Shown: positions 1-64,000 of the stretch, piece by piece | Numbering within the stretch: position 1 is the first letter of the stretch | Layout of the letters: the number at the start of each line of letters is the position of its first letter | Virus record (IMG/VR): IMGVR_UViG_3300042261_002390 | Coordinates: 1 to 64,000 of that record | Strand: one strand, 5' to 3' | Length of the DNA: 64,000 bases | Notes under the pieces: model-generated | The model's input: only the letters and a program-made list of their open reading frames with translations | Databases searched by the model: none | What the model was told of the DNA's origin: nothing | Program-made: the position numbers and the translations under genes

Positions 1-402
1 TTATATCCTAATTTTATCATTGCATTTTTTACTAATGTCTGTGCTTGTGAGATACTTATTGGTTTTTTTTTGTGGATTAAAACCAGTGGTACTTAGCCAT
101 TCTTGAAATCCATCTTGGAACTCTTGTGGTGTATCGATACGAGATGCAGCATATTTGACTGATGCTGATTTATCTGTTGCTTTTTGTAAATATGCCACAT
201 CAGCAGGTACTTTGTATTGCGTCGTTGGTAATTGTTCGTCAATTGGTACGCAGTTAGGTACTTCTTTACCTTCCTTATCTTTCATACCATATTGTTTATA
301 GCCATCCCAACATGAATCTTCTTCATTTAACACCGTTTTATATCCGGGATTTATTTTTCCCATCATTTCAAATAGTTTCTGTTTATTTTGAACATTTTTC
401 AT
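1..402 (-). CDS. Putative head-associated/internal protein with shared N-terminal leader and CWxGY...VPNC motif
   Basis: Likely true start MKNVQNKQKLFEMM at 402 (GGTATTTATA motif on the minus strand at ~418-426); contains CWDGYKQYGMKDKEGKEVPNCVP, a motif type seen in T4-like phage late proteins; TAA stop at 1-3. Confidence 0.6.
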   Translation of the reverse strand: MKNVQNKQKLFEMMGKINPGYKTVLNEEDSCWDGYKQYGMKDKEGKEVPNCVPIDEQLPTTQYKVPADVAYLQKATDKSASVKYAASRIDTPQEFQDGFQEWLSTTGFNPQKKTNKYLTSTDISKKCNDKIRI

Positions 403-434
403 GTCACCGATTTTAATATAAATACCACAATAAC

Positions 435-466
435 AAAAAAATGCACCAAGAAATATGGTGCATTTT
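435..466 (-). terminator. Intrinsic terminator-like hairpin
   Basis: AAAATGCACCA (438-448) / TGGTGCATTTT (456-466) 11-bp stem with T-run on the minus strand. Confidence 0.6.
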
Positions 467-641
467 AATCTCATCAGTCAGTCTCAAATTTTACGTAACC
501 ACTGTCTGGCAATAAAATTTTGAAAAATCATTCCTGATTTTCTCTCAGACATAACTTAATTCATTCATACATTAAGCAATGATTTTCATTTAATAAATAC
601 TGTATTTCATGAAATTTATTATGGATTAATATAAAACATTT

Positions 642-650
642 AGTATTTAT
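642..650 (+). promoter_or_regulatory. Putative late promoter motif AGTATTTAT (first of ~25 copies)
   Basis: Same GTATTTAT core recurs ~15-70 nt upstream of starts at 402(-), 667, 3909(-), 3986, 5177, 7760, 10254, 10863, 13002, 15110, 21296(-), 22811, 30013, 32212, 35920, 38615(-), 40772(-), 41076, 43980, 44419, 48997(-), 53850, 54986, 57942; CTATTTATA variant before 21398 and 22025. Confidence 0.75.
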
Positions 651-666
651 TATAAATTTTAAATCG

Positions 667-1266
667 ATGAGCACAAAAAATTTAATAAAAATCATTAATG
701 AAACTATTGAAGAATTTGATTTTCTCAATAACGAATCTTCGCTTATGGAACAGGAAACCATTGAATTGCTGAAAAATGAAGATTTACAGAAACGATTTAT
801 TTGTGATTCATTATTGGAGAGAAATGATAAAATAAAAATCCTTAATAATGAAACAGCTAGTTTAGACGGTAATTGGGAAGATGACCCTGAAAACGCAAAC
901 ATGCTTTCAATTCAATATGACCTAAAGTTACAATACACATATGATTCGAGTAAAGAACCTTTAGTATTTAATTTATTTTTTTATGGTGATAATGTTAGTA
1001 TTTCTACAGCAGATAGATTTGAAAAGGGCGATTATTACTCACCATCAGAAGGAGAATCTTGGTTTAGAAATATTGAATGGGATGATATTAATGTTGAATT
1101 GGCAACCGAAGAAGGTGATGAAATTAGATTTATAGCATTTGAAAAAGCACCGTATAATATTAAAAGAATATTCATACGTGAATTTGTCGAAAATTTTATT
1201 AGTTCATATACGAATATGGATGTTCGTGATAATATTGATAAATCACAAGTAACACAATTCTGCTGA
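667..1266 (+). CDS. Hypothetical late protein (acidic)
   Basis: 199-aa ORF behind late motif; N-terminal LIKIINE; no recognisable catalytic motif. Confidence 0.6.
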   Translation: MSTKNLIKIINETIEEFDFLNNESSLMEQETIELLKNEDLQKRFICDSLLERNDKIKILNNETASLDGNWEDDPENANMLSIQYDLKLQYTYDSSKEPLVFNLFFYGDNVSISTADRFEKGDYYSPSEGESWFRNIEWDDINVELATEEGDEIRFIAFEKAPYNIKRIFIREFVENFISSYTNMDVRDNIDKSQVTQFC

Positions 1267-1267
1267 G

Positions 1268-3985: not shown

Positions 3986-5149
3986 ATGAATAAAAACATT
4001 AAACTAAGATTATTCGAAATGATGAATAGAGTTGGTGGAATGCCAATTGTTAATGAAGCTGATTCATTACCACCCGGAATTACTAATAATGACATCATTT
4101 CATTGGATGATTTTGTTGATTCAGGCAATATTCAAGAAGATACGACTGGTGTTCAAATGCAACCAGCAGATATAAAAAAAATTGTCGATAAAAGGAAATC
4201 TGATGCTCCACGTGATAGAGAAGACCCATATATTCATTCTAAGACAATTGAAATTATTGATAAAAATGGTAATGAAATCGACCAAGAACAGCTAAAAAAA
4301 ATAATAACGCAAAGACCACCAACACTTTTAAGTAGTAATGAAAAAGTGGGTAAAACAGGTATCTTAAAGATATCATTGCCTGCATATAAAGGATTATATT
4401 ACGATGAAAAAGATGGACAATTTAAAGTAGTTAATACGTGTCCAAACGCTGGTGAATGTAAACTATATTGCTATCAACAAAAGGGTAGGTCTGTTATGTA
4501 TGATAATGCTGCAATTAGTAAAACCAGAATATTAAACTTTTTACTAAACCATTGGGATGCATTTAAATATAAAATGGTTGATGAAATTGAAACAGCCAAA
4601 ATGAGCAATGATAAAAAGGGATTAAAAACTATCGTAAGATGGCATGATTCCGGGGATTTTATTTCTGATAAGTATCTTGATTTAGCTATGGATATTGCAA
4701 GGGAAACACCAGATGTTTTACATTATGCATATACTAAAATGGTTTCATCAGCAAAACGAGCAAACGTACCTAGTAATTTTGTGTTTAGATATTCATTAGA
4801 TACTGGTTCACCCGAAACCGGATTAGTTAACAAATATGAGGATAAACATACTGAAGTAGTGCCTAAGCAATTATTTAAAGACTTAATGTATGCTAAAAAA
4901 GAACCGATTAAAGGTGGAAAAGAATTTAAAAATATTTGGCATTATAATTCAAAACACGATTTAATCGAATTTAAAAACAGATTATCAAAACAATATGGAA
5001 TCGATGTAAATACAATTATAACATTTGATGAAATGCAAAAAATTCCTGAGCAAGGTGATAATAAGTGGAACGTAATTGTTACACCATCAGACCCGGACAC
5101 TGCAGCACATAGAAAAGATGTATTAGGTGTTTATTTATTGATTCATTAA
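3986..5149 (+). CDS. GP88-like phage protein (Cys cluster, radical-SAM-like)
   Basis: NTCPNAGECKLYCY Cys triad, IVRWHDSGDF and HYAYTK motifs characteristic of the Gp88-like family; N-terminal leader KLRLFEMM...IVNE. Confidence 0.65.
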   Translation: MNKNIKLRLFEMMNRVGGMPIVNEADSLPPGITNNDIISLDDFVDSGNIQEDTTGVQMQPADIKKIVDKRKSDAPRDREDPYIHSKTIEIIDKNGNEIDQEQLKKIITQRPPTLLSSNEKVGKTGILKISLPAYKGLYYDEKDGQFKVVNTCPNAGECKLYCYQQKGRSVMYDNAAISKTRILNFLLNHWDAFKYKMVDEIETAKMSNDKKGLKTIVRWHDSGDFISDKYLDLAMDIARETPDVLHYAYTKMVSSAKRANVPSNFVFRYSLDTGSPETGLVNKYEDKHTEVVPKQLFKDLMYAKKEPIKGGKEFKNIWHYNSKHDLIEFKNRLSKQYGIDVNTIITFDEMQKIPEQGDNKWNVIVTPSDPDTAAHRKDVLGVYLLIH

Positions 5150-10862: not shown

Positions 10863-12923
10863 ATGACGACTGAACGTAATAACAATACACACGAAAAAGA
10901 AGATATATTTCCTGAACATATTCCAATAATACCATTGGATATTGAGAGAGAAAAAGCCAAAGAACAAGCTAGAAAACTGGCTGATGACTTAAGAAAAAAA
11001 ACAGGAAAAATTGAGCCAATTATAATCACTAAGGCTGGTAAGGCAAAAAAAGCATCGGATTTAATATACTTCGAACAAGAAGACGAAATTATTAGATGCA
11101 TTTCAGACCCGGTGTATTTTATTGAAACCTATCTAACGGTTTTCGACCAAACACAAGGTACTGCTGGTATGATTGTCCCGTTTAAATTATTTGATTTTCA
11201 AAAAGAATTAATACAAACATATCGAGAAAACCGATTTATTGTTGCCAATAAATATCGACAAGCAGGTATTTCAACAACTACATGTGCATATATTGCATGG
11301 TACATAATGTTTAACAATAATAGACAGGTTGCTATTATTGCAAATAAACTAGAAACAGCACGTGATGAAATCATGAGTGATGTTGTATTATTTATTGAAG
11401 GATGTCCGGATTGGTTAAGACCTAAAACAGGTAAAGAAACTAAAGGCAAGTATAAAGACACACAAAAATTAAAAATATACGATAATGACTCAAAGTTGGG
11501 GGCGTTTTCAGCTAAGGGTGGTCTTCGTGGTATGACACCTACACTAATTTTTTGGGATGAAACAGCGTGGACTGAAAAGGGCGATACTTTTTGGACTGCA
11601 GCAAAGCCAACTCTTGGTACTGGTGGTGGTGCAATCATGGTTAGTACTCCGTCCGGGTTAGATGCTGTATTTTATAAACACTTTAATGAAGCACGTAAAG
11701 GTAAAAATAGTTTTAAAGCAGTTGAATTATGGTGGTTTAATGACCCACGCTATAATAAAGGTTTGGAGTGGGTAAAAAACAAAAATAAAGAAAACGAAAT
11801 TAGAATTCAAGATGAAAATTGGGATAAAATCAGAAGAATCCAAATGATGGATGATGGCTGGGAAGCTACATCACCTTGGTTCGAAGAACAAGTAAGGGAT
11901 GCTAACGGTGATATGCGTAAAATTGCACAAGAGTTACTTTGTTCATTCTTAGGTTCTGGTGATAATTTTATTGCTGAAGAGTATTTAAAAAGAATTCAAG
12001 AAAATGAAATAAGAACACCAATCAGACAAGAATATCTTGATTTAAATATGTGGATATTTGAAGACCCACAACCATTAGAAACATATATAATGGCACTAGA
12101 TGCATCTCCGGGTCATGGTGAAGATAATTCAACACTAAATATGTTAAAAACAGTTGAGATTATTGAAGAAAAAATAATCACAAAAAACGGTAAGCCAAAA
12201 AGAGTTAAAATAAAAAGGCATAAAGTAGAACAAGTGGCAGAATACTATGGAAAAGTTTCTCCCCAAATGCTTTCAGAAATTGCTTACCAATATGGCAGAC
12301 GATATAATAATGCATACTGTGTCGTTGATATAACTGGTGGTTACGGTGTTCAAACTGTTGAGAAATTACTTGAAATTGGCTATGAGAACGTTCATTATGC
12401 TGAAGTTACACATAAACCGTCTCGTGATAGATTACAAGGTTATATTAAAAAAGGTCAAAAAGTAATGCCAGATGGTGCAGTAATGAATGTTGACCTAATA
12501 CCGGGTTTCTTTATTGGCAATAACCGTCCATCAGTATTGCTTGAAATGCAAAGAGCTATTCATCTTGAAGATGTTATAATCAGGTCAATTCGATTGTTAG
12601 ATGAATTAAAAACATTTGTTACTGTTCCGGGGAATCGTGTTGCTGACCATAAACGTTCATTCCATGATGATTCAGTGATGGGACTTGCAATCGGATTATT
12701 TGTATTAAATTTTGATATGGCAAGATTTAAGCAAAGTAAAGGTGTGACAGAAAAAATGTTAAATGCAATAATAACTAATAATGAAATAGGGGAGATTGGG
12801 AAAAGAATAGCTGATGATATGGTAAAAAACAACAAACCAATTGTTTCACCAACAAGTGTTTCACCTAACAATCCATATTTAGCACATAATTGGCTATTTA
12901 ACGGATTAAATAGAAGAAACTAA
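10863..12923 (+). CDS. terL: Terminase large subunit (T4 gp17-like)
   Basis: PFKLFDFQ adenine-binding motif, NKYRQAGIST Walker A, LIFWDE Walker B, VSTPSG motif III, ALDASPGHGED and HDDSVM RNase-H-type nuclease motifs. Confidence 0.95.
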   Translation: MTTERNNNTHEKEDIFPEHIPIIPLDIEREKAKEQARKLADDLRKKTGKIEPIIITKAGKAKKASDLIYFEQEDEIIRCISDPVYFIETYLTVFDQTQGTAGMIVPFKLFDFQKELIQTYRENRFIVANKYRQAGISTTTCAYIAWYIMFNNNRQVAIIANKLETARDEIMSDVVLFIEGCPDWLRPKTGKETKGKYKDTQKLKIYDNDSKLGAFSAKGGLRGMTPTLIFWDETAWTEKGDTFWTAAKPTLGTGGGAIMVSTPSGLDAVFYKHFNEARKGKNSFKAVELWWFNDPRYNKGLEWVKNKNKENEIRIQDENWDKIRRIQMMDDGWEATSPWFEEQVRDANGDMRKIAQELLCSFLGSGDNFIAEEYLKRIQENEIRTPIRQEYLDLNMWIFEDPQPLETYIMALDASPGHGEDNSTLNMLKTVEIIEEKIITKNGKPKRVKIKRHKVEQVAEYYGKVSPQMLSEIAYQYGRRYNNAYCVVDITGGYGVQTVEKLLEIGYENVHYAEVTHKPSRDRLQGYIKKGQKVMPDGAVMNVDLIPGFFIGNNRPSVLLEMQRAIHLEDVIIRSIRLLDELKTFVTVPGNRVADHKRSFHDDSVMGLAIGLFVLNFDMARFKQSKGVTEKMLNAIITNNEIGEIGKRIADDMVKNNKPIVSPTSVSPNNPYLAHNWLFNGLNRRN

Positions 12924-13001: not shown

Positions 13002-15029
13002 ATGGCAGAACAAGAAAAAAAGGGTACAATATATCAACAACTCAATAAACTATTGAATTTAGATGGATTTGGCTTTCAAGATGCACAACCTTCGGTGTCA
13101 CAATCAACGCCTGCGAAAGAAACTAAGGTTATTATCAAAGGTAATAGTCCTGAAGAAATAATGAAAAAAGGTTTGGAGCTTGAGCAAAAACGTGAACTCC
13201 AAAATAAATTTTTTAGGACAACTGATAGAGGATTTCAAAAAGCACTTCAATATGAAGCAGCTAGGCTTCCTGCATATCTCGACTATGAAGGTATGGAATA
13301 TTACCCAATCATCTCATCAGCATTGGATTTATTCATGGAAGAAGCAACTACTATCGGTGTTAATGGTAAAATGTTGAATATCTATTCCAATAAAGAGCGT
13401 ATTAAAACCTTATTGGAGGAATTTTTCTACGATATTGTTGACGTTAATGTAAATTTACCTTTTTGGACTAGAAATATGGTAAAATATGGTGATAATTTTA
13501 TTCTTTTATATGGTGAGAGAAAAAAAGGTATCACACATGTTAAACAATTAGTTAATTACGAAATTGAAAGATTTGAGAGAATTCAAAATGGCGTACCAAT
13601 TGTTAAATTTAAAGAACGTATGACTGGTGATGAATTTAATCTGTTTGAAATAGCACATTTTAGATTACTTGGGGACGATAAATACATTCCTTATGGTTCA
13701 TCAGTTTTAAATAAAATTCGTCGTGTATTTAGACAATTAGTTATGGCTGAAGATGCTATGTTAACTTATCGAATAATACGTGCTGGTGAAAAAAAGGTAT
13801 TTAAAATTGACGTGGGAAATATTGATGAAGACGATATTGAAGATTACATCTATAAAGTAGCCACCAAGTTTAAAAAAATTGCACAAGTAGCACCAAACGA
13901 TGGTCAAATCGACTATAGATTTAATATTCTAGGAAACGATGAAGATTATTTTTTACCTGTAAGAAATGCAAACACTCAAACTGGTATTGATACCCTTCCC
14001 GGGGCATCTAATTTGGATGCTATTCAGGATATAGAATATCTCCGTGATAATTTATTTGTTGGACTTGGTATACCTAAACCATTTTTAAGCTTTCAAGATG
14101 CTGCTGGTGCTGGAAAAAACATGGCACAATACGATATTCGTTTTGCAAAAAAAATCAATCGTATTCAGCAAGCATTGATTCAAGAGTTGAATAAAATGGC
14201 AATGATTCATTTACTTTTATTGGGATATAGTAATGAAGATTTAACCGATTTTCAATTAACATTAACCAATCCATCAGTACAACAAGAATTGATGAAGTCT
14301 GAATTAATGCGAGATAAAGCTCAAACATATACTGAATTAACTCGTGGTGAAAACGGTATTGCTGCAATGTCACATACGAACGCTAAGAGAATGATTTTCA
14401 ACATGAGCGATAAAGAAATCGTTGAAGACTTGAAGCAGCAGAAAATGGAAAAAGTTGTCATGCAAGAACTTGCAGATGCACCAGTTTCAATTAAGAAGAG
14501 TGGTTTATTTACCGACATCGATAAAAGATTTGCAGAACCTGAAGGAGCATTAGGAATGTCACCGTCAGGTGGTACTGAAGCAGGTGGTATGCCACCTGTT
14601 GGTGGCGAATTGGGTGGAGCACCCGGAGCACCAGCATTAGGTGGTGAAATGGGTGGAGCACCAGCATTAGGTACACCTGCCCCAACACCCGGAGCACCTA
14701 TGGGTGGTGGTGAAATCGGAGGCGGTGGTGAAATCCCACCATTAGCTGAATCACAAGGAAAATTATCTTCAGAAGAATTTGCCAAACATGTTGAAAATCT
14801 AGTTTTTGGAAGTAGCTTGAAGATAAACCCAGCTAAAACTAAAAGAACAAGAAAAATAATCAATGAAAATACTGAAACAAACGAAAAGTTAAATAAAAAA
14901 GCACTTAACATGATTAGTGAAATCGATGATATACTAAAAAATTCAGAATCAATCAATAAAAAAAGAGTAACAAAAAATACTGAAAATGTGGATTTGGATG
15001 ACTTAAATGATATTGATATACCTGAATAG
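13002..15029 (+). CDS. Portal protein (T4 gp20-like)
   Basis: EDAMLTYRIIRAGEKKVFKIDVGN, EDYFLPVR, TGIDTLPGASNL, DIEYLRDNLFVGLGIP, DIRFAKKINRIQ match gp20 conserved blocks; follows terL. Confidence 0.95.
   Translation: MAEQEKKGTIYQQLNKLLNLDGFGFQDAQPSVSQSTPAKETKVIIKGNSPEEIMKKGLELEQKRELQNKFFRTTDRGFQKALQYEAARLPAYLDYEGMEYYPIISSALDLFMEEATTIGVNGKMLNIYSNKERIKTLLEEFFYDIVDVNVNLPFWTRNMVKYGDNFILLYGERKKGITHVKQLVNYEIERFERIQNGVPIVKFKERMTGDEFNLFEIAHFRLLGDDKYIPYGSSVLNKIRRVFRQLVMAEDAMLTYRIIRAGEKKVFKIDVGNIDEDDIEDYIYKVATKFKKIAQVAPNDGQIDYRFNILGNDEDYFLPVRNANTQTGIDTLPGASNLDAIQDIEYLRDNLFVGLGIPKPFLSFQDAAGAGKNMAQYDIRFAKKINRIQQALIQELNKMAMIHLLLLGYSNEDLTDFQLTLTNPSVQQELMKSELMRDKAQTYTELTRGENGIAAMSHTNAKRMIFNMSDKEIVEDLKQQKMEKVVMQELADAPVSIKKSGLFTDIDKRFAEPEGALGMSPSGGTEAGGMPPVGGELGGAPGAPALGGEMGGAPALGTPAPTPGAPMGGGEIGGGGEIPPLAESQGKLSSEEFAKHVENLVFGSSLKINPAKTKRTRKIINENTETNEKLNKKALNMISEIDDILKNSESINKKRVTKNTENVDLDDLNDIDIPE
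14575..14745 (+). repeat. Gly/Pro/Ala low-complexity repeat in portal C-terminal tail
   Basis: GGELGGAPGAPALGGEMGGAPALG; GCACCAGCATTAGGT occurs twice. Confidence 0.75.
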
Positions 15030-24461: not shown

Positions 24462-26144
24462 ATGGGATTTTTAACAGAAAGTGCTGAAGTTGGTAATATC
24501 GGATTAAAACAACTTCGTGAGCAAAGAGAAATTACAACTAACCGTTGGGAAAAAATCGGTTTATTGGAAGGTTTGGAAGGTAATGTAAAAGAAAATTGTG
24601 CTCAATTATTTGAAAATCAATTGTCTTATATGATTAACGAATCTTCAGATTCGACCAATTCAGGTCAATTTGAAACCGTAGCGTTCCCGGTTATCCGAAG
24701 AGTATTTGCAAAATTACTTGCTAACGACATCGTGTCGGTTCAAGCATTGAATTTACCTATTGGTAAATTGTATTACATTAACCCAAAAGCTAGTGTTCGT
24801 GTACAAGATGGTACTCATACAAACGTAGCTGGTCTTGAGCATACTTCACCTGATGGTGCTTATGGTAATGCTGCAACAAAACCATCAACTTCAAGAACAC
24901 AGTTCGAAACTCGTTCATTATACGATGCATTCTATGCAAGTGAATATAATGAAGAAGGTACTTCATTGTTCGACCGTTCAAAAGGTGACATGACTGTTCA
25001 CACTGGTGCAACTTCTGCATCTACTTTCGTTATCGGTACTGATAAATTTATCACTGTACAAATTGGTGGTTTCTTGGTAGCAGATTCAGGTAAATTAGTA
25101 GGTCCTGCTGGTGTTCAGATGGATACTGAATCATTCCTTGCTTCTTTGAAAATTACTGCTGATGCTGACTTAGTAGCTCCTGCTGGATTTACTGACCAAA
25201 ACATTCCTGCTGGTTCTTCAATTCCTTTCAACGTAAAGGTACAGAAATACGGTCAGGCAATCGTTGACAAAGCTGGTATTATTACTTTAGTTGTTGACGT
25301 TCAGTATGCCGGAACTAATGGATATCAACCATTGAGTGCTACAACTACTCCTACATTCAACTACGAATATAGAAGTTATTCAGACCTTGAAGAAGATTCA
25401 AGAATGGCTGAAGTTACTTTCCAACTTGACCAAGTTACTGTTTCCGTAGAAACTCGTAAAATGCGTGCTATGTGGACACCTGAATTAGCTCAGGACGTTA
25501 GTGCATTCCATAACATTGATGCTGAAGCTGAATTAACTGCTTTATTGTCAGAACAAATGGCTGCTGAAATCGACCGTGAAATTCTTCGTGACCTTCGTAG
25601 AGGTGCTGCTTGGACTGCTCGTTGGGACTACAACGGATTGCGTCGTCAATCAAATACTTACTATGGAACACAAAAAGACTGGAATCAGACATTAATCACT
25701 AAGATTAACCAGATTTCTGCTCAAATCCATAAAGCTACTCTTCGTGGTGGTGCATCTTGGGTTGTTGTTTCTCCTGAAGTAAGTGCTGTATTCGATGACC
25801 TTGAATACTTCCACGTATCAAACGCTGCTCCTGAACAGGACAAATATAACATGGGTATCGAAAAAATCGGTACATTGAGTGGACGTTACATCGTTTACCG
25901 TGACCCATATTCACCTGCTAATACTATCCTTATTGGACACAAAGGTAATAGCATCTTAGAGACCGGTTACATATACGCTCCATACGTACCAATGCAGTTA
26001 ACTCCTGTAATGTACAACCCATTCGATTTCACTCCTATTCGTGGTATCATGACTCGTTATGCTAAGAAAATGGTATTGAACCGTTACTACGGACGTATCT
26101 ATTGCGATGGTCTTCAAACTTTTGGTATTGGTGATTTGCAATAA
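24462..26144 (+). CDS. Major capsid protein (T4 gp23-like)
   Basis: VRRVF-like PVIRRVF, DIVSVQAL, TRKMRAMWTPELAQDVSAFHNIDAEAELTALLSEQMAAEIDREI, GYIYAPYVP, RGIMTRYA. Confidence 0.97.
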   Translation: MGFLTESAEVGNIGLKQLREQREITTNRWEKIGLLEGLEGNVKENCAQLFENQLSYMINESSDSTNSGQFETVAFPVIRRVFAKLLANDIVSVQALNLPIGKLYYINPKASVRVQDGTHTNVAGLEHTSPDGAYGNAATKPSTSRTQFETRSLYDAFYASEYNEEGTSLFDRSKGDMTVHTGATSASTFVIGTDKFITVQIGGFLVADSGKLVGPAGVQMDTESFLASLKITADADLVAPAGFTDQNIPAGSSIPFNVKVQKYGQAIVDKAGIITLVVDVQYAGTNGYQPLSATTTPTFNYEYRSYSDLEEDSRMAEVTFQLDQVTVSVETRKMRAMWTPELAQDVSAFHNIDAEAELTALLSEQMAAEIDREILRDLRRGAAWTARWDYNGLRRQSNTYYGTQKDWNQTLITKINQISAQIHKATLRGGASWVVVSPEVSAVFDDLEYFHVSNAAPEQDKYNMGIEKIGTLSGRYIVYRDPYSPANTILIGHKGNSILETGYIYAPYVPMQLTPVMYNPFDFTPIRGIMTRYAKKMVLNRYYGRIYCDGLQTFGIGDLQ

Positions 26145-26230: not shown

Positions 26231-27688
26231 ATGGTTTCATATCAATATAAAATTAGAAAAGAAAAAGAATTGTCTGAAGTGCTTGATTTTGATATTAATC
26301 ATGTAAATCTACATAATACGACAATAAGAGAAATTAATAAAAAAACAGCAACAAAAATAATATTAGAGTATGAATATTTACATTCAATGCCTTTTGCTTG
26401 TAAATATTTTTTTGGGATATATTTTAATATTAATAATTGTGAATATTTGGGAGGTGTTTTAGTTTTTGGCAATGAATATTCTGAAAATACTGGTGCTTGG
26501 CAAAAATATGGATACGAAGATAAGATTCTGCTATTAAGTCGTGGGGTTTGTTTATGGTGGACACCAAAAAATACAGCATCATATTTTATTAGCAGGGTTT
26601 GTGATATACTAAAAAAAACCACCAACTATAAAATAATTACAGCTACTGTAGACCCTGCTGCTGGTGAGATTGGGACAATTTATCAATCATTAAATTGGTA
26701 TTATGTTGGCTTAATGAGTGGCAATTATCATGGTAATAAAATGGCAACTCGATTCGGAGTTATAATCAATGGTAAATTACGATTGTCACGGTGGATACGT
26801 AATAAAATAGGTAGTATGCGCCGTGAAGAAATTTTAAAGCATTATCCGGATGCTATATTTGTACCACAATACAGAAAACAAAGATATTTTTATTTCATCG
26901 GTAATAAAACAGAAAATAGAAAACTTATTAATAGTATTAAGCATCTATTATTACCATATCCCAAAAGAAATAATCAGATTTCAGGAATAATTTATTTAAT
27001 AAAAAATGAAATTAACAATAAAATATATGTAGGGCAAACAATTCGTTCATTACGTGATAGAATTCGTGAATATGAAAAAGGATTTGGCAATGTATATTTA
27101 AACAATGCATTTAAAAAATATGGTTGGAGTAATTTTAAATTTGAAGTAATTGATACTGCAGAGAATTTGGAAGAATTAAATGAAAAGGAAATCTCTTACA
27201 TTAAAAAATATAATTCAAACAATAAAGAATTTGGGTATAATATTGAATCCGGTGGAAAAAATGCAATTCCTGATACTGAGACGTTAGAGAAAATGTCTAA
27301 ATCACATTTAGGCATTGTTCAATCTGAAGAATGGATTAACAGAAGAATAGCTAAAGCAGGTACTGATGAAGCAAAAAAATACGGTAAAACAAAAACAGAG
27401 GATGAAAAAACACAATTAAGTATTAATTCTCCAAAATATTGGAAAGGTAAATCTCGTGATACTAAGACTAAAGAAAAAATCAGTAAAACAAAACTTGAGA
27501 ATGGATTGTCTGAAAAACAAAAAGAAGTATTATTAAAAAAAGTATATAAAGTAGATATTATCAACAATACTACAATAGAATATGAGTCAACATTATCTGC
27601 ATCAATAGCAGAAAACGTAAATCAATCTACAATATCAAGACGATGTTCGAAAAATAAAATAATAAAAAACATATTGTGGAAATATTAA
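26231..27688 (+). CDS. Mom-family DNA-modification (GNAT-like) domain fused to a GIY-YIG homing endonuclease
   Basis: N-half: EYLH...GVLVFG...LSR...KNTASYFI...VDPAAGEIGTIYQSLNWYYVG...KQRY...YPK (Mom pattern); C-half: GIIYLIKNEINNKIYVGQT, GYNIESGG, NUMOD3-like repeats, C-terminal HTH. Confidence 0.75.
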   Translation: MVSYQYKIRKEKELSEVLDFDINHVNLHNTTIREINKKTATKIILEYEYLHSMPFACKYFFGIYFNINNCEYLGGVLVFGNEYSENTGAWQKYGYEDKILLLSRGVCLWWTPKNTASYFISRVCDILKKTTNYKIITATVDPAAGEIGTIYQSLNWYYVGLMSGNYHGNKMATRFGVIINGKLRLSRWIRNKIGSMRREEILKHYPDAIFVPQYRKQRYFYFIGNKTENRKLINSIKHLLLPYPKRNNQISGIIYLIKNEINNKIYVGQTIRSLRDRIREYEKGFGNVYLNNAFKKYGWSNFKFEVIDTAENLEELNEKEISYIKKYNSNNKEFGYNIESGGKNAIPDTETLEKMSKSHLGIVQSEEWINRRIAKAGTDEAKKYGKTKTEDEKTQLSINSPKYWKGKSRDTKTKEKISKTKLENGLSEKQKEVLLKKVYKVDIINNTTIEYESTLSASIAENVNQSTISRRCSKNKIIKNILWKY

Positions 27689-33477: not shown

Positions 33478-34596
33478 TTAGGTTAATAAAGGTGCTTTAA
33501 TATATGACTGAGGATAGTAATTAATCAATTCAATATCATTAGCATTAACATCATCAATTGAAGTTAATTTACGTTTGATATTTAATTTGGCTTTACAAAA
33601 AGTTATATCATTTTCATTCAATAAATTTACATTTTTTCCAATATAATTATCTTCGAGAAGTTTATAATATCTTCTAAGATATTCCTGAGCAGCCTCAAAA
33701 TGTACGTCATATAAATGACAATCAATTGCAGTACACACAACTTCTTTAGGAATCATGTTAACAATATTAGCAATAATATGCACTAATAAAGCATATGATG
33801 CCATATTATATGGCTGACCCAAGAAGAAATCATTCGAGCGAATATTAAACCATAAGTTCAAATAAAATTTAGGTATGCCGTATCTATCCAATTTTTCTTC
33901 AGTATCGAGTTCTTGAGTATCAATCGGAAATCTTTCTTTTTTAATTGCTAATCTTTCTTCAAAACTTAACGGCACGGTATGAAATTGAAACATATTATGG
34001 CAACTCGGTAAGCCAACGATACCATTTTCAATATCAGTAGGGTTATGTGCCACAACAATCATTCTCCGGTCATCAGGGTTTTTTAACAAGGTATTGATAC
34101 AATTTTGTAATTGGTCTGTTTGACCATTAAATTCACGCCATTGCTTACCATATACTCGACCTAATTCTCCCCAACGATTCTTTTCTTTTTTAGCTAATTC
34201 AATAAACGTTTCCTTATCAAGAGGTTTAAATTTATCGTTGGGTTTTTTTCCATCAACATCAGCACCATCACCATAGATTTTAATATATTCTGCCTTCATG
34301 CTTTCTTGCTTTTCTTTATAATAGCGATAAGCATCGTCAGTCCAAATATTACAACCGTTCTCAATGAGGTATTTAATGTGAGTATCGCCAGCAATAAACC
34401 ACAATAATTCATGCATAATATTGCTGAATTGAATTTTCTTAATATCCATTAAAGGAAATTCTTCCTGTAAATCAACACGCATTATTTCAACAAAACGACC
34501 ATGTATATCACCGATGCGTGACGGTCTTTTTTTCAATGGATTCTCAATTAATTCATTAAGAATCCTAGCATACTGAGATTGATACGATACTGCCAT
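33478..34596 (-). CDS. thyA: Thymidylate synthase
   Basis: ELLWF, LGRVYGKQWR, RRMIV, LPSCH (catalytic Cys), RSNDFFLGQPYN (dUMP-specifying Asn), DCHLY. Confidence 0.95.
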   Translation of the reverse strand: MAVSYQSQYARILNELIENPLKKRPSRIGDIHGRFVEIMRVDLQEEFPLMDIKKIQFSNIMHELLWFIAGDTHIKYLIENGCNIWTDDAYRYYKEKQESMKAEYIKIYGDGADVDGKKPNDKFKPLDKETFIELAKKEKNRWGELGRVYGKQWREFNGQTDQLQNCINTLLKNPDDRRMIVVAHNPTDIENGIVGLPSCHNMFQFHTVPLSFEERLAIKKERFPIDTQELDTEEKLDRYGIPKFYLNLWFNIRSNDFFLGQPYNMASYALLVHIIANIVNMIPKEVVCTAIDCHLYDVHFEAAQEYLRRYYKLLEDNYIGKNVNLLNENDITFCKAKLNIKRKLTSIDDVNANDIELINYYPQSYIKAPLLT

Positions 34597-47257: not shown

Positions 47258-47270
47258 TTTTCTATTTAAA

Positions 47271-48997: not shown

Positions 48998-49065
48998 ATT
49001 ATTAATATTTACATTGATTTTATTTTTTCTAAAATAGTTTTAGTACATATAAATACTAATTATTA

Positions 49066-49105
49066 AAAATTAATGGTGACCGATAATTCAATCACCATTA
49101 ATTTT
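49066..49105 (-). terminator. 14-bp hairpin at the end of the sigma-like gene
   Basis: AAAATTAATGGTGA / TCACCATTAATTTT. Confidence 0.6.
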
Positions 49106-49871: not shown

Positions 49872-49887
49872 AACTAAATGTTATTTA

Positions 49888-50700: not shown

Positions 50701-50714
50701 CTATTAACTTTTAA

Positions 50715-51857: not shown

Positions 51858-51862
51858 TTTTT

Positions 51863-53709: not shown

Positions 53710-53849
53710 ATTTATAATTAAGTGTTTTTAATATAATTATTTGCTTATATATGCTATTACGTAATAAAAAAAATAATCTTGAATTATGATGAAAAAAAAA
53801 TATTCAGTATTTATCGATGAAATAATAATTAAATATAAAAAATTATAAA

Positions 53850-54755: not shown

Positions 54756-54943
54756 CAGGTGAGTATAAAAAAATGGTTAATGAAGAAATATATATTTTAA
54801 CAAAACATGCTAAATTCCAAGCAGATTATATAGAAAATCTTCCAATTTATCGTAGAAGACATTTTCTATATTTATTACAGAAGGAAAATGAGGAAATTGA
54901 AAAAGCTCAAGAAGCTGCAAAATCAAAAAGACCGAGAAAATAA
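54734..54943 (+). CDS. gp51-like chaperone in the -1 frame (not in track); probable programmed frameshift product
   Basis: -1 frame open from the T9 run (54734) to TAA 54941-43: ...EEIYILTKHAKFQADYIENLPIYRRRHFLYLLQKENEEIEK; internal ATG at 54773. Confidence 0.7.
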   Translation, partial: FFFPRDLAGEYKKMVNEEIYILTKHAKFQADYIENLPIYRRRHFLYLLQKENEEIEKAQEAAKSKRPRK

Positions 54944-54985
54944 AAATCCCGGTCTTTTGTATTTATAATAAACAAATTTTAATAC

Positions 54986-57523: not shown

Positions 57524-57941
57524 AAGTGTTAAAAAATGTTAAAAAATGGCATATTTGAGAAAATCACTAGAATATGTCATTTTTTTCTTGTAACTTTGAC
57601 GCAGTTTTGCTTCGCTCACGCAAGCTTCCGCTACACAACACAGCTTTTCTCGCTTCTTCGAAACCAGAAACAAACTTACAATGTTTGTGATTTGATTTAA
57701 AAATCGAACCAAAACTTGAAATAAAAGGATAGCTATGCTCATATTGTAACCAATATTCAAAAATAAAATCAAAAGTAATAAATTTATTTGAAAAATTGAA
57801 TAATTATAATTAAATCCCAATTATTGTTTTAGTATATATTGTTGATATCACTAGCTCCGGGTTTGGAGTAGACTCCGGCAATGTAAAATTAGATATTATA
57901 AATTTAATATGCAAGTATTTATTTTAAAATATCACATTTTA

Positions 57942-61145: not shown

Positions 61146-61146
61146 A

Positions 61147-61461
61147 ATGCCATACATAGACTATAATAGATATGCAATACTCCAAAATACAAATGGTACT
61201 ACTGATGCAATGCCATTTGTAAATCTTCCTATAAATCAGAGTGATAAATATGAATATTGGAGTTCAGTAACGAGCAGAATGGATAAATTATCTCAAAAAT
61301 ATTATGGAAATCCATTTTACGATTTCTTGATATTATATGCTAATCCAGAATATGTTTCAGAATTTGATATTTCTGACGGTGCTCTTATTAGAATACCATT
61401 TCCTTTGGCTAAAGTAAAGGCTGATTATGAGGCAACATTAACACAATATAAAAAACAATAA
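61147..61461 (+). CDS. LysM-like baseplate wedge protein (gp53/P2 X-like)
   Basis: RMDKLSQKYYGNP...ILYANP...GALIRIP. Confidence 0.8.
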   Translation: MPYIDYNRYAILQNTNGTTDAMPFVNLPINQSDKYEYWSSVTSRMDKLSQKYYGNPFYDFLILYANPEYVSEFDISDGALIRIPFPLAKVKADYEATLTQYKKQ

Positions 61462-61464
61462 TTC

Positions 61465-61495
61465 TTGCATATTTCATTTTTAATTAATATGTTTG
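61465..61495 (+). promoter_or_regulatory. Bacteroidota-type promoter (TTG-N20-TATGTTTG)
   Basis: TTG 61465-67, TATGTTTG 61488-95, upstream of the glycosyltransferase cluster. Confidence 0.6.
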
Positions 61496-61526
61496 CAGTT
61501 GCAATATACTGCAAACATATTTTTTT
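61487..61526 (+). terminator. 13-bp hairpin (terminator or operator) overlapping the promoter
   Basis: ATATGTTTGCAGT-TGCAATAT-ACTGCAAACATAT-TTTTTT. Confidence 0.6.
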
Positions 61527-62213
61527 ATGAAAAAAACAAAAATTATTGTTATTTTTTCTTCACATTTAACTGAAGATGAGAATAATAAATTTATAAAGCA
61601 TGTTTCGGACACTATTGGTGTTAACCATATTGTAGTCTGTTATCCAAATTTTAATCAATTTAGCTTACCTCAGATTTACAATACTGCACATCGTGAACAT
61701 TATAGTGATGATTCAATAATGGTTTTTTGTCATAACGATATTACGTTTAAGACAAATAATTGGGGTAGATTATTGCTTACTAAATTTAATAGTACTGATT
61801 TTGATATTATAGGTGTTGCTGGAAGTACATATTTAGCTGAAAATGGGGTTTGGTGGGATGATAAAAGTAAGATGTTTGGTATTGTTGAACATACTGACAG
61901 TATTAATACTTGGACAAGTGAATACTCTAAACATATTCCCGGGTACATTAAACCTGTTGTTTTAGTTGATGGTTTGTTTATCGCAGTAAATTACGATAAC
62001 ATTACTAATGATTGGGATGAAGATTTTAAAGGATTTCACTATTACGATATTTCATTTGGATTTAATAATGTATTGAGTGGTAATAATATTGGTGTAACTA
62101 CTGATATTAGAATATTACATCAATCAATTGGTATGGTTAACGAGCAGTGGGAAGAAAATAGAAAATTATTTATTAAAAAATATAAAAATTATTTGCCATA
62201 TTCTATTAAATAA
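61527..62213 (+). CDS. Glycosyltransferase (GT2-like)
   Basis: SLPQIYN, VFCHNDI, IIGVAG, VVLVDGLFIA, GFHYYDISF. Confidence 0.85.
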   Translation: MKKTKIIVIFSSHLTEDENNKFIKHVSDTIGVNHIVVCYPNFNQFSLPQIYNTAHREHYSDDSIMVFCHNDITFKTNNWGRLLLTKFNSTDFDIIGVAGSTYLAENGVWWDDKSKMFGIVEHTDSINTWTSEYSKHIPGYIKPVVLVDGLFIAVNYDNITNDWDEDFKGFHYYDISFGFNNVLSGNNIGVTTDIRILHQSIGMVNEQWEENRKLFIKKYKNYLPYSIK

Positions 62214-62246
62214 ATATAAACATAAACTACTAATAACATATGAAGA

Positions 62247-62876
62247 ATGATACAAGTAGATAAAATTGAAGACGGATTGCCAGTTAGTGTAATTGTTCCA
62301 TTAAGTAAACAAAGAAAGGATTTTTTCGAGAATATGGTTCTACCATTGATTGAAGCAAATGGGGTTAATGAAATCATTATCAACGATGATGAGGGTTCAG
62401 CACCTAAAAAAAGAAATGATGGTTTTAAACGTTCTACTCAACCATATGTGTTTTTTTGTGATGATGATATTTTATTGCCAGCAGACTATATTGGAGCATT
62501 GTACGAAAAACTTGAAAATAATCCTGATGTTTCATTCGTATATACCGGATATCACGGAATAGTATTATACCCTGAAACACACCCAATGCGTGGAAATTTT
62601 CAGATTCCTAATATTGAATTTAATAAGTCTGCATTAATGCAGGGAAATTATATTTCGACCATGACATTAATGCGCCGGGAAGTATTTCCGATGTTTGATG
62701 AAAATTTAAAAAGATTACAGGATTGGGATGTCTTTTTAACTATTGTTAAAAATGGTGGCAAGGGAATGCTTGTGCCAAATCAGACATTTTATGCATATTA
62801 TTTAGATTCTGGTATTACTTCAAACAACAATAATGAAATTGATGCAGTCTTTGCTATAAGAAAAAAACATTTTTAA
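62247..62876 (+). CDS. Glycosyltransferase family 2
   Basis: VSVIVP, APKKRNDG, FFCDDDI, FDENLKRLQDWD. Confidence 0.92.
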   Translation: MIQVDKIEDGLPVSVIVPLSKQRKDFFENMVLPLIEANGVNEIIINDDEGSAPKKRNDGFKRSTQPYVFFCDDDILLPADYIGALYEKLENNPDVSFVYTGYHGIVLYPETHPMRGNFQIPNIEFNKSALMQGNYISTMTLMRREVFPMFDENLKRLQDWDVFLTIVKNGGKGMLVPNQTFYAYYLDSGITSNNNNEIDAVFAIRKKHF

Positions 62877-62879
62877 ATT

Positions 62880-63815
62880 GTGAAAAGGTCTAATATCAAT
62901 AAAAAAGAATTAATTGCTAGAAAAATTAAATACAGACATGAACAAAATTTGTTTCTGAATAATATGAATGATAGAGATTTAAGACGATTTAATAAAATTG
63001 AACCAAAACCTGATGTAACCGGATTAAGTCGTGGGGATAGACGAAGTGGAAACTATTTGGATTTAGTTGAAAATAATTATATTAAAAAAGAAAATGTCGA
63101 TGTTGATATTGTAATTTGTATTCCATCACACGATAGATATGAAAAATTAAAAAGAATTATTGAACAAATAAAAGATTCTAATTCAAAATATAGTTATTTA
63201 ATTGTTATATTAAATGATGGGTCATCTGATGAAAGATATAATACGTTAGTTAATGAATACCCAAATATTATTCAGATAGTAAATAGCGTTCCGAATGGTA
63301 AAGCATTACACTGGTTTTGTTATAATCAAATGTGGAATGTTTTAAAAGGTTGTATTTGTCATGCTGTTTTACAAATGGATGATGATTTTATATTGTGTGA
63401 CAATTTTCTTGATATAATTGTTGATTTATTTTTTGAAAAGAAAAATGTTAATAGTAGAATTATGGCAATTTCACCTCATCTATGGTCATTTAAAAAAGCT
63501 TGTAAATATGAGTCGTGGTGGAATAGAAATGATTTGATTGATGGTATTGCATTGATTGATTATGATGTTATAAAATATTTGAATTTTGAATTACAGCCAG
63601 TAAATGCTAAGGATGTAATTAAACCGGGTGTACAAGTGAGAGCATGGACACAAATTTCTATGGGAATTAAAATGTATAGAGGCATTATTTTTAGAACATC
63701 CGAATCGTTGGTTTTCCATGACGGTAATGAAGATTCTAAATTACATGGTGATTTTAGAAAAGTAAAAAAAATATATACACATAATTTTATTAATAAAAAT
63801 ATTGAATATGATTAG
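62880..63815 (+). CDS. Glycosyltransferase family 2-like
   Basis: IVICIPSHDRYEKL, ILNDGSSD, LQMDDDF. Confidence 0.85.
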   Translation: MKRSNINKKELIARKIKYRHEQNLFLNNMNDRDLRRFNKIEPKPDVTGLSRGDRRSGNYLDLVENNYIKKENVDVDIVICIPSHDRYEKLKRIIEQIKDSNSKYSYLIVILNDGSSDERYNTLVNEYPNIIQIVNSVPNGKALHWFCYNQMWNVLKGCICHAVLQMDDDFILCDNFLDIIVDLFFEKKNVNSRIMAISPHLWSFKKACKYESWWNRNDLIDGIALIDYDVIKYLNFELQPVNAKDVIKPGVQVRAWTQISMGIKMYRGIIFRTSESLVFHDGNEDSKLHGDFRKVKKIYTHNFINKNIEYD

Positions 63816-64000
63816 CATAATATTAAATGTTTATAAGAGACCATATATGTTGGAAAAACAGATTGAAGCAATAAAAAATCAATCAATATCCATTAAAAGT
63901 GAAAATATTCATGTTTGGTATAATAATGGCGATGTAGTTCAACATACTCCAAATGATAAAAATATAAAAACATATTTATGTAATTGGAATAGTAAGTTTT
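63808..64000 (+). CDS. Partial GT2-like protein (truncated by window end; not in track)
   Basis: MISIILNVYKRPYMLEKQIEAIKNQS...VWYNN, open to the window edge. Confidence 0.65.
   Translation, partial: MISIILNVYKRPYMLEKQIEAIKNQSISIKSENIHVWYNNGDVVQHTPNDKNIKTYLCNWNSKF

What the first reader, a model, noticed from the sequence alone, without database searches (positions are those of the whole stretch)
1..64000. GATC and CCWGG appear purged genome-wide, distorting codon choice
I found no GATC and no CCAGG/CCTGG by manual reading. A mononucleotide estimate predicts over 100 GATC, and NCAGG with N = A, G or T is abundant. Every Pro-Gly I checked uses CCG/CCC despite strong CCA/CCT preference elsewhere (~12108, 12501, 22409, 41100, 54744, 63624). 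Asp before a C-starting codon is GAC rather than the usual GAT (e.g. gac cca ~4224, gac ccg ~5089, gac ctt ~25384). This makes CCGG conspicuously common. Inference: long-term selection against host restriction or methylation at exactly the Dam (GATC) and Dcm (CCWGG) type sites. This also implies the DNA is not fully shielded by hypermodification.
Basis: partly seen in the sequence, partly recalled or inferred. Interest (0 to 1): 0.7.

Follow-up and report, generated by a model that had tools for sequence, protein, structure and literature searches.

The report
Phage genome stripped of restriction sites
This freshwater jumbo phage has removed every copy of GATC, CCWGG and at least a dozen other short restriction-enzyme target sequences from its 246 kb of DNA, bending codon choice and even protein sequence to do so; this is an unusually extreme case of a known way for phages to escape bacterial restriction enzymes.

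Summary
The window has 0 GATC and 0 CCWGG, and so does the whole 246,149-bp contig. A codon-preserving null expects 465±16 GATC and 76±6 CCWGG. These two are not special. At least 16 site classes are eliminated: GATC, GGNNCC, GGCC, CCWGG, CTGGAG, CMGCKG, CGCG, RCCGGY, GCSGC, ACTGGG, RGCGCY, GAGGAG, GRCGYC, GRGCYC, CCATGG and GGCGGA. CATG, GTAC, TCGA, ACGT, TGCA and CTAG are normal, and CCSGG is 4× enriched. The purge also reaches proteins: Trp-Pro, which forces GGCC, occurs 0 times against 28 expected.

The contig is about 75% of a T4-like jumbo phage from lake metagenomes, probably with a Bacteroidota host. Relatives with 76-91% identical capsids carry different purge sets (AGCT, CTAG, CCGG, or RGATCY but not other GATC). 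The relative with three C5-methyltransferases keeps GGCC and CCWGG. The 246 kb contains no DNA methyltransferase, DpdA, hydroxymethylase or PurZ.

Best reading: unmodified DNA shaped by many host Type II restriction enzymes. The link to Dam and Dcm is incidental. The kind is known, but this member is extreme.

The parts
1..64000 (.). Whole window (and the whole 246 kb contig) lacks GATC, CCWGG, GGCC, CGCG, GGNNCC, CMGCKG, CTGGAG, CCATGG and GRCGYC, among others. CCSGG and CCGG are enriched.
12108..12113 (+). Example of forced codon choice: Pro-Gly written CCG GGT inside the terminase gene. The same pattern occurs at 12501, 22409, 41100, 54744 and 63624.
   Evidence: Genome-wide, 63 of 63 Pro-Gly pairs use CCC/CCG.
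4223..4228 (+). Example of forced codon choice: Asp-Pro written GAC CCA. The same pattern occurs near 5089 (GAC CCG) and at 25383-25388 (GAC CTT).
   Evidence: Genome-wide, 275 of 275 Asp codons before a C-starting codon are GAC.
24462..26144 (+). Major capsid protein (T4 gp23 family). It identifies the phage and was used to collect 80 relatives and build the tree.
13002..15029 (+). T4-type portal protein (gp20 family).
10863..12923 (+). Large terminase subunit, T4 type.
33481..34596 (-). Thymidylate synthase homolog. It keeps the catalytic Cys and the dUMP-specifying Asn. With DHFR, dCMP deaminase and dUTPase elsewhere, this indicates canonical dTTP supply, not hydroxymethyl-C.
26231..27688 (+). 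Mom-family (PF25680) domain fused to a GIY-YIG endonuclease module. It is the only candidate DNA-modification domain found. Its presence in relatives does not track the purge state.

Best explanation
The contig is about three quarters of a T4-like jumbo phage of roughly 330 kb from lake water, most likely infecting Bacteroidota.

Its DNA enters cells essentially unmodified. It has survived long exposure to many different host Type II restriction endonucleases by losing every copy of their recognition sequences. Any single unmethylated site can be lethal, so selection drives each targeted word to zero.

Most removals are synonymous: GAC for GAT before C, CCS for CCW before GG, ATT or ATA for ATC after G. 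Where no synonymous escape exists, the peptide itself has been removed. Trp-Pro forces GGCC, and Met/Trp-[VADEG]-Pro forces GGNNCC.

The set of purged words is a negative image of the restriction specificities circulating in the host population. It differs between sister lineages because their hosts differ.

Shown here: the purge, its statistics, its codon and peptide mechanics, its mosaic distribution, and the absence of methyltransferase and modification genes in 246 kb.

Inferred: that host endonucleases are the selective agent, and which enzymes they are.
For: 1. Sixteen site classes with expectation of at least 15 under a codon-preserving null have O/E of 0.1 or less. These are GATC 0/465, GGNNCC 0/105, GGCC 0/77, CCWGG 0/76, CTGGAG 0/60, CMGCKG 0/57, CGCG 0/52, RCCGGY 2/51, GCSGC 4/42, ACTGGG 2/33, RGCGCY 2/29, GAGGAG 2/24.5, GRCGYC 0/20.5, GRGCYC 1/17, CCATGG 0/17 and GGCGGA 0/15. 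Other 4-mer palindromes are at 0.9-1.1.

2. An unbiased scan found 24 of 1,935 testable 6-mers depleted by at least 85%. Ten are palindromes, and most of the rest are arms of degenerate palindromes. That is the signature of Type II sites.

3. Codon context rules are absolute. Forced peptides are absent: WP 0 vs 28.6+-5.3 and [MW][VADEG]P 0 vs 25.3+-4.6, with controls normal.

4. Relatives have mosaic purge sets. G001 has AGCT 0/540, RGATCY 0/144 with 285 other GATC, WCCGGW 1/94 and CTTAAG 0/43. G003 has AGCT 0/697, CTAG 0/277 and CYCGRG 0/109. G014 has CCGG 1/78.

5. On the capsid tree the purge state changes at least 13 times for GATC, 11 for CTAG and 10 for CCWGG.

6. The methylase trade-off is seen. 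G003 has three C5-methyltransferases and keeps GGCC 321, CCWGG 193 and CCGG 1036. G010 has one and keeps CCWGG.

7. The 246 kb has no D12, N6/N4, C5, phage-Dam or gamma-N6 methyltransferase and no DpdA.

8. The pattern matches the published generalisation that phages eliminate orthodox Type II sites (PMC6286503).
Against: - The host is unknown, and no host restriction enzyme was identified. My attempt to find host-derived genes failed.
- About 25% of the genome is missing. This is the part collinear with G001 1-65 kb and 300-327 kb. In G001 that part holds two ORFs with half an N6_N4 methylase domain.
- A Mom-like domain is present and could modify some adenines.
- Four purged words are asymmetric IIS/IIG-type sites (CTGGAG, ACTGGG, GAGGAG, GGCGGA). 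PMC6286503 reports that this class is not generally avoided, so either these hosts differ or another cause acts there.
- Enzyme names attached to motifs come from my own knowledge of REBASE prototypes. They were not looked up.
Confidence: 0.85

Rival explanations
1. The purge is specifically about Dam (GATC) and Dcm (CCWGG) methylation. In this reading the phage avoids being methylated, or avoids methyl-directed processes such as MutH, SeqA or DpnI-type cleavage, at exactly those two sites.
For: GATC is the largest single deficit (0/465). PMC6286503 notes that GATC is also avoided where hosts encode methyl-dependent IIM enzymes. Losing the site protects against both DpnII-type and DpnI-type enzymes.
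Against: GATC and CCWGG are only 2 of at least 16 purged classes. Relatives purge RGATCY alone and keep hundreds of other GATC. Dam-class methyltransferases are absent in 14 of 14 complete relatives, whatever their GATC state. MutH and SeqA are gammaproteobacterial (own knowledge), while the signals here point to Bacteroidota.
Confidence: 0.05
2. The DNA is chemically modified, and only the sites the modification fails to protect have been purged. Candidates are 2-aminoadenine through the PurA-like gene, Mom-type adenine modification, a 7-deazaguanine, or a hydroxymethyl base plus sugar.
For: - A 383-aa adenylosuccinate-synthetase homolog.
- A Mom-family domain.
- A weak QueC-like protein.
- Glycosyltransferases and a sugar-nucleotide cluster.
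- A quarter of the genome is unseen.
Against: - The PurA-like protein keeps the catalytic Asp (GDEGKG). That Asp is Ser in 100% of 147 phage PurZ/PurZ0 sequences (PMC12884076).
- Six Pfam scans found no DatZ, MazZ, DUF550 or DUF5664.
- dZ-DNA already blocks BpmI (CTGGAG), NheI (GCTAGC), AatII (GACGTC) and AvaII (PMC12944874). The first three sites are nevertheless fully purged.
- There is no DpdA/TGT.
- The TS homolog is dUMP-type with Cys and Asn intact, and DHFR is present.
- Mom-like presence among relatives does not track the purge.
Confidence: 0.06
3. The phage encodes its own site-specific nucleases, used to degrade host or competitor DNA, and avoids their targets in its own genome.
For: The genome is rich in nucleases: many GIY-YIG, HNH and LAGLIDADG homing endonucleases and two TnpB-like genes.
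Against: - Those families recognise long targets, not 4-6-bp palindromes.
- No Type II restriction-endonuclease family appeared in any Pfam scan.
- Sixteen or more specificities would need as many enzymes.
- Each relative would need a different set.
Confidence: 0.03
4. Neutral mutational or compositional bias, for example deamination of methylated cytosines or CpG depletion, or an artefact of assembly or library construction.
For: CGCG and GCGC are CpG-rich, and CGCG is low in all five genomes examined.
Against: - Counts are exactly zero against expectations of 50-465 under Markov and codon-aware nulls.
- m6A at GATC is not mutagenic.
- TCGA and ACGT contain CpG and are normal.
- The set differs between close relatives.
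- Independent assemblies from two studies agree base for base.
Confidence: 0.01

Closest known systems
Restriction-site avoidance in phage genomes (Rusinov et al. 2018, PMC6286503; earlier Sharp 1986, Karlin, Rocha, from own knowledge)
   Same: Short, mostly palindromic Type II recognition words are eliminated from a lytic dsDNA phage. No Type I-like bipartite avoidance was seen.
   Different: - The scale: at least 16 specificities driven to about zero in 246 kb or more.
- It includes four asymmetric IIS/IIG-type words, a class reported as not avoided.
- Forced peptides have been lost from the proteome.
- The pattern is documented as a fast-changing mosaic across a whole uncultured jumbo-phage clade.
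Staphylococcus phage K / Twort-like phages lacking GATC, and Bacillus phages lacking GGCC (own knowledge, not checked here)
   Same: Complete absence of a host enzyme's 4-bp site in a large lytic myovirus.
   Different: In those cases the host enzyme is known (Sau3AI, BsuRI) and one or two sites are involved. Here the host is unknown and many sites are involved.
Palindrome avoidance in bacterial genomes rich in R-M systems (Gelfand & Koonin 1997; Microcystis, PMC2442094)
   Same: Rare words are mostly palindromes that match restriction sites.
   Different: There it reflects self-damage in the host chromosome and is partial. Here it is in a virus and is complete.
Phages that shield DNA chemically (T4 glucosyl-hmC, S-2L/PhiVC8 Z-DNA, Mu Mom, 7-deazaguanine phages)
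   Same: The same adversary, namely host restriction. This phage is T4-like in its structural genes.
   Different: The opposite strategy. No modification pathway was detected, and sites that Z-DNA would protect are purged anyway.

Membership tests
Passive anti-restriction by recognition-site avoidance | Site counts far below a composition- and codon-aware expectation | tested here: met
   16 classes with O/E of 0.1 or less and expectation of at least 15. GATC is 0 vs 465+-16.
Passive anti-restriction by recognition-site avoidance | Depleted words are predominantly Type II-like (short palindromes or degenerate palindromes) | tested here: met
   10 of the 24 depleted 6-mers are palindromes, and most of the others are arms of RCCGGY, GCSGC, RGCGCY, CMGCKG or GGWCC; no depletion of N5-8 bipartite motifs.
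Passive anti-restriction by recognition-site avoidance | Avoided sites correspond to restriction enzymes of the actual host | not testable with these tools
   The host is unknown and REBASE is not available. The host-gene scan was uninformative.
Passive anti-restriction by recognition-site avoidance | The avoided set varies with lineage or host, and is relaxed where the phage carries a matching methyltransferase | tested here: met
   mosaic purge sets; the two relatives with C5-methyltransferases keep CCWGG, and one of them also keeps GGCC and CCGG. Only two lineages carry such genes, so this is suggestive.
Z-genome (2-aminoadenine) phages | PurZ with Ser in place of the catalytic Asp13 of PurA | tested here: not met
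   The alignment shows GDEGKG, so the Asp is kept. The criterion comes from PMC12884076.
Z-genome (2-aminoadenine) phages | Companion enzymes DatZ and MazZ (or DUF550, DUF5664, DutZ, DmtZ) | tested here: not met
   None appeared in the Pfam scans of 233 ORFs of at least 90 aa. One scan showed only 25 of 27 families, and 25% of the genome is missing.
T4-type hydroxymethylcytosine DNA | dCMP hydroxymethylase (TS fold with Asp in place of the dUMP-specifying Asn) plus DNA glucosyltransferases | tested here: not met
   there is a single TS-family gene. It keeps the Asn ('PYNMASY') and the Cys, and its best solved matches are all thymidylate synthases. DHFR is present.
7-deazaguanine (Dpd/preQ0) DNA | DpdA (TGT-family) transglycosylase | tested here: not met
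   no TGT match. There is only an orphan QueC-like protein at 27 bits.
Self-methylating phages | Phage-encoded DNA methyltransferase | tested here: not met
   PF02086, PF01555, PF00145, PF05869 and PF02384 are all absent from the 246 kb. The missing part could hold one; G001 has two half-domain N6_N4 ORFs there.
Mu Mom-type adenine modification | Mom-family acyltransferase-fold protein | tested here: inconclusive
   PF25680 at E 1.7e-24, fused to GIY-YIG. It is about 30% identical to annotated 'Mom-like' phage proteins. Activity is unknown, and its presence does not track the purge.
T4-like (Straboviridae-like) myoviruses | gp23-type capsid, gp20 portal, T4-type terminase, gp25 baseplate wedge, sheath, prohead protease | tested here: met
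   It is only distantly related to cultured members (best MCP identity 33.6%, Flavobacterium phage).

The most novel reading that the evidence does not exclude
This uncultured clade of freshwater jumbo phages relies almost wholly on site avoidance. Each genome's list of missing words would then be a readable record of its host population's restriction repertoire.

That record would extend to IIS/IIG-type asymmetric sites, which phages are thought not to avoid. It would also be written into protein sequence. Trp-Pro depletion persists as a slowly decaying 'fossil' in lineages that tolerate GGCC again (G003 16 vs 52 expected, G014 9 vs 24).

If so, purge lists could be used to match uncultured phages to hosts through host R-M content, and to order past host shifts.
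Probability: 0.45. Interest if true: 0.6.

Novelty: new member of a known kind. Interest (0 to 1): 0.45.

Why it matters
Restriction-site avoidance is textbook, but it is usually shown for one or two sites in a cultured phage with a known host enzyme.

Here a genome of 246 kb or more has at least 16 specificities at or near zero, with an absolute grammar of codon context and measurable loss of peptides. Dozens of metagenomic relatives show the set turning over quickly and relaxing where methyltransferases were gained.

This gives three things:
1. A quantitative natural example of how strongly R-M systems shape large phage genomes.
2. A possible host-matching signal for uncultured jumbo phages.
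3. A caution for annotation and codon-usage studies. Context-dependent codon bias and dipeptide gaps in such genomes are defence footprints, not translational optimisation.

Tried and rejected
- **Nucleotide search against cultured phages:** no match.
- **Z-DNA:** rejected. The PurA-like protein keeps Asp13, has no partner enzymes, and sites that Z would protect are purged.
- **GmrSD-like Type IV nuclease as evidence for unmodified DNA:** dropped. Only the DUF262 N-domain is present, in a 263-aa protein with no nuclease domain.
- **QueC-like hit:** an orphan at 27 bits with no DpdA.
- **'Methylate instead of avoid' for GATC:** not supported. There is no Dam-class gene in any of 14 complete relatives.
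- **Host identification through a probably host-derived UDP-GlcNAc 2-epimerase:** one 50% hit on a 1.7-kb MAG contig, uninformative.
- **Site-by-site tracing against the closest relative:** limited by 71% nucleotide identity. GATC in L011 most often corresponds to GACC, AATC or GATT here.
- **Type I-like bipartite motifs:** no depletion found.
- **Supplementary table of the dZ restriction paper:** not held.
- **Microcystis as host:** considered because of its many R-M systems. The missing Shine-Dalgarno sites and the TAnnTTTG promoters favour Bacteroidota.
- **Known anti-restriction proteins (Ocr, ArdA and similar):** not searched for.


Full report
**1. The observation**

The window contains no GATC and no CCAGG or CCTGG. 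ACAGG, GCAGG and TCAGG occur 33, 32 and 53 times, and CCGG 94 times. Expected counts in the window are about 168-178 GATC and about 39 CCWGG.

The window is the first 64 kb of a single 246,149-bp contig. The whole contig likewise has zero GATC, CCWGG, GGCC and CGCG.

I called 297 ORFs (94% coding, table 11 adequate). That null expects 465±16 GATC, 76±6 CCWGG, 77±7 GGCC, 52±6.5 CGCG and 103±9 GGNNCC. All are observed at 0. The null is conservative, because the codon usage it preserves is itself distorted by the purge.

Contigs assembled independently from a second lake study match window 22811-27688 without a single difference.

**2. The codon claims**

All hold, and they are absolute.

| Context | In context | Elsewhere |
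|---|---|---|
| Asp before a C-starting codon | GAC 275, GAT 0 | 84% GAT |
| Pro before Gly | CCC or CCG 63, CCA/CCT 0 | 81% CCA/CCT |
| Ile after a G-ending codon | ATC 0 of 730 | ATC 779 of 5658 |
| Gly before a C-starting codon | GGC never used | GGC 577 |

The compensation is visible as CCSGG at 4.2×, CCGG at 1.64× and CCCGGG at 8× over the null.

**3. What is really there is much broader**

An enumeration of all degenerate words up to 6 nt, a panel of about 130 known-type specificities and an unbiased list of residual 6-mers agree. Observed/expected sites:

| Strength | Sites |
|---|---|
| Expectation ≥15, O/E ≤0.1 | GATC 0/465, GGNNCC 0/105 (all 16 words absent), GGCC 0/77, CCWGG 0/76, CTGGAG 0/60, CMGCKG 0/57, CGCG 0/52, RCCGGY 2/51, GCSGC 4/42, ACTGGG 2/33, RGCGCY 2/29, GAGGAG 2/24.5, GRCGYC 0/20.5, GRGCYC 1/17, CCATGG 0/17, GGCGGA 0/15 |
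| Weaker support | CCTNAGG 0/11, GCTNAGC 1/11, GTCGAC 0/9, GCTAGC 0/8, GACNNNGTC 0/8, CTCGAG 0/7 |
| At expectation | CATG, GTAC, TCGA, ACGT, TGCA, CTAG, GANTC, GTNAC, CTNAG, GCWGC and most IIS words |

Of 1,935 testable 6-mers, 24 are at least 85% depleted. Ten are palindromes, and most others are arms of degenerate palindromes. No bipartite Type I-like word is depleted.

**4. The purge reaches the proteins**

TGG CCN cannot avoid GGCC. ATG or TGG followed by GNN and then CCN cannot avoid GGNNCC.

Trp-Pro occurs 0 times against 28.6±5.3 expected from within-protein shuffles. [MW][VADEG]P occurs 0 times against 25.3±4.6. The controls PW, WS, [MW][VADEG]S and [MW][LIFKN]P are normal.

Across five genomes the peptide gap tracks the DNA state. 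WP is 0 in the three GGCC-free genomes. It is 16 (52 expected) and 9 (24 expected) in the two that tolerate GGCC. I read the remaining deficit as a residue of an older purge. That is an inference.

**5. Identity**

The structural genes are T4-like: gp23 capsid, gp20 portal, T4-type terminase, prohead protease, sheath and gp25. The nearest cultured capsids are only 33.6% identical (Flavobacterium phages).

The record is an IMG/VR virus, about 75% complete. It is collinear with 65-300 kb of the complete 327,676-bp relative G001. The unseen ~90 kb corresponds to G001's tRNA-array region.

The DNA occurs in freshwater and lake metagenomes.

Only 6 of 297 genes have GGAG upstream, and the leaders are A-rich. 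TTG-N17-21-TAnnTTTG occurs 18 times upstream of genes against 4.1 expected. It is not proof.

**6. Relatives**

Eighty IMG/VR loci have capsids 76-91% identical. Their purge sets are a mosaic. GATC is eliminated in 23 of 58 loci, CTAG in 19, AGCT in 4 and CCGG in 5-6. CCWGG and GGCC are eliminated in most.

On the capsid tree the states need at least 13 (GATC), 11 (CTAG), 10 (CCWGG), 8 (GGCC), 4 (AGCT) and 3 (CCGG) changes. Differences occur inside well-supported small clades.

Whole-genome lists for four complete relatives:

| Genome | Purged | Kept |
|---|---|---|
| G001 (closest) | AGCT 0/540, RGATCY 0/144, WCCGGW 1/94, CTTAAG 0/43, GGNNCC, GGCC, CGCG, CCWGG | 285 other GATC |
| G003 | AGCT 0/697, CTAG 0/277, CGCG 0/322, CYCGRG 0/109, RGATCY 1 | 1,232 GATC, 321 GGCC, 193 CCWGG |
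| G005 | GATC 0/540, CTAG 12/379, GAGGAG 1/35 | |
| G014 | mainly CCGG 1/78 | |

CGCG, RCCGGY, CCATGG and RGCGCY are low in all five genomes. Distinguishing RGATCY from GATC, and RCCGGY or WCCGGW from CCGG, is enzyme-level specificity.

**7. Methyltransferases and modification**

The 246 kb has no D12/Dam, N6/N4, C5, phage-Dam or gamma-N6 methyltransferase and no DpdA.

Among 14 complete relatives, none has a Dam-class gene. C5-methyltransferases occur only in G003 (three) and G010 (one). These are the lineages that keep CCWGG, and G003 also keeps GGCC and CCGG. This fits avoidance and self-methylation being alternative solutions, but it rests on two lineages.

The TS homolog keeps the catalytic Cys and the dUMP-specifying Asn, and matches true thymidylate synthases. 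DHFR, dCMP deaminase and dUTPase are present. This is ordinary dTTP supply.

A 383-aa PurA-like gene raised the possibility of Z-DNA. It keeps the catalytic Asp, which is Ser in all 147 phage PurZ/PurZ0 sequences (PMC12884076). It has no DatZ or MazZ partners. Its homologs sit in large myoviruses annotated PurA-like.

In addition, dZ-DNA blocks BpmI, NheI, AatII and AvaII (PMC12944874). CTGGAG, GCTAGC and GACGTC are nevertheless fully purged.

Two caveats remain. One is the Mom-like domain fused to a GIY-YIG module. The other is the unseen quarter of the genome, where G001 has two ORFs with half an N6_N4 domain.

**8. Mechanism and comparison**

The best-supported reading is passive anti-restriction by recognition-site avoidance. 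A survey of prokaryotic viruses found this to be common for orthodox Type II sites and not observed for Type I and IIG sites (PMC6286503).

This case fits that kind in palindrome bias, lytic-type phage and absence of Type I-like depletion. It stands out in four ways:
- the number of specificities;
- completeness in a very large genome;
- four asymmetric IIS/IIG-type words (CTGGAG, ACTGGG, GAGGAG, GGCGGA);
- the peptide-level footprint.

The enzyme names I attach to motifs are from my own knowledge of REBASE prototypes: MboI/DpnII, NlaIV, HaeIII, EcoRII/BstNI, BpmI/GsuI, MspA1I, FnuDII/BstUI, Cfr10I/BsrFI, TauI, BmrI, HaeII, BseRI, AcyI/BsaHI, BanII, NcoI and EciI. They were not looked up.

Site loss protects against both methyl-sensitive and methyl-dependent enzymes for the same word. 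That may be why it is favoured over carrying methyltransferases. This is an inference.

**9. Verdict**

The Dam/Dcm interpretation is too narrow. The 'host restriction' and 'not hypermodified' inferences are supported, with caveats.

This is a striking new member of a known kind, not a new kind of system.

Noticed in passing
window 26231-27688 (+): A Mom-family (PF25680) domain is fused in one ORF to a GIY-YIG endonuclease module, immediately downstream of the capsid gene. The Mom-like part is present at the same place in 17 of 80 relatives, usually contiguous with the GIY-YIG part. It looks like a mobile cassette carrying a possible DNA-modification domain.
   Followed up: partly
L001:18336-18408 (genome 82336-82408): A tRNA (Rfam 53.6 bits) whose anticodon loop reads CU-AUC-AA, i.e. 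tRNA-Asp(AUC) with A34. This is very unusual. GAT makes up 3703 of 4681 Asp codons. Relatives carry other A34 tRNAs: Cys-ACA and Leu-AAG in G001, Gly-ACC and His-AUG in G005. The syntenic tRNA in G001 is Asn-GUU.
   Followed up: partly
L001:18449-18534 (genome 82449-82534): A tRNA with a CAU anticodon and a 13-nt variable arm (84-86 nt long). That is odd for Met or Ile2.
   Followed up: no
G001 10-65 kb (L104-L107); G003 249-283 kb; G005 104-148 kb: Complete relatives carry arrays of 39-60 tRNAs, including CUA-anticodon (amber-suppressor-type) tRNAs and, in G003, a UCA one. Stop-codon reassignment in part of the clade is possible. Our contig lacks this block and reads well under table 11 (94% coding).
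   Followed up: no
L007:14564-15712 (genome 198564-199712): A 383-aa PurA-like adenylosuccinate synthetase that keeps the catalytic Asp, so it is not PurZ. The guanine-specifying TKLD motif appears to be missing. It is probably an adenylate-supply gene for a 69% A+T genome. Homologs occur in Rhizobium, Vibrio and Mycobacterium cluster C myoviruses.
   Followed up: yes
window ~47000-64000 continuing into L001-L002 (epimerase at genome 66434-67366): A sugar-nucleotide and glycosyltransferase cluster: UDP-GlcNAc 2-epimerase, NAD-dependent epimerase/dehydratases, a cytidylyltransferase and three GT2 enzymes. Its target (capsid, host surface or DNA) is unknown.
   Followed up: no
L003-L005 and L009-L010 regions: Two TnpB/Cas12f-like (OrfB_IS605 + TNB) genes and many homing endonucleases (GIY-YIG, HNH/NUMOD, LAGLIDADG). 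There is also a glycosyltransferase with a DXD sugar-binding region and weak similarity to the TcdA/TcdB catalytic GT domain (E 3e-7).
   Followed up: no
L007:3576-4364 (-) and L003:17021-17845 (+): A 263-aa protein with only the DUF262 (GmrSD N-terminal) domain. Separately, an orphan QueC-like PP-loop protein (27 bits) sits next to an SNF2 helicase. Neither has the partners of a known system.
   Followed up: partly
whole contig: IMG/VR labels the record 'provirus'. However, no stretch of the 246 kb contains any of the purged sites, and the contig is collinear with complete relatives, some of which have direct terminal repeats. No host flank is apparent, so the label looks wrong.
   Followed up: partly
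window 23280-23582: Contigs in both runs X1 and X3 include a form that skips 301 bases here, within the ORF at 22811-24433, next to short repeats at 22944-22980 and 23709-23745. This is either a length variant or a repeat-driven assembly collapse.
   Followed up: no
window ~23237 (loose ends): Both lake runs also hold a diverging contig whose sequence includes GATC. A related phage without the GATC purge therefore co-occurs in the same water.
   Followed up: no
genome-wide, GGWCC sites: All 17 remaining GGWCC sites are AGGWCC/GGWCCT, and YGGWCCR is absent (TGGNCCA 0 vs 9.4 expected). AGCCC (17/67) and CCCAG (31/99) are also strongly but incompletely depleted. These may be further specificities that I could not name.
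   Followed up: partly
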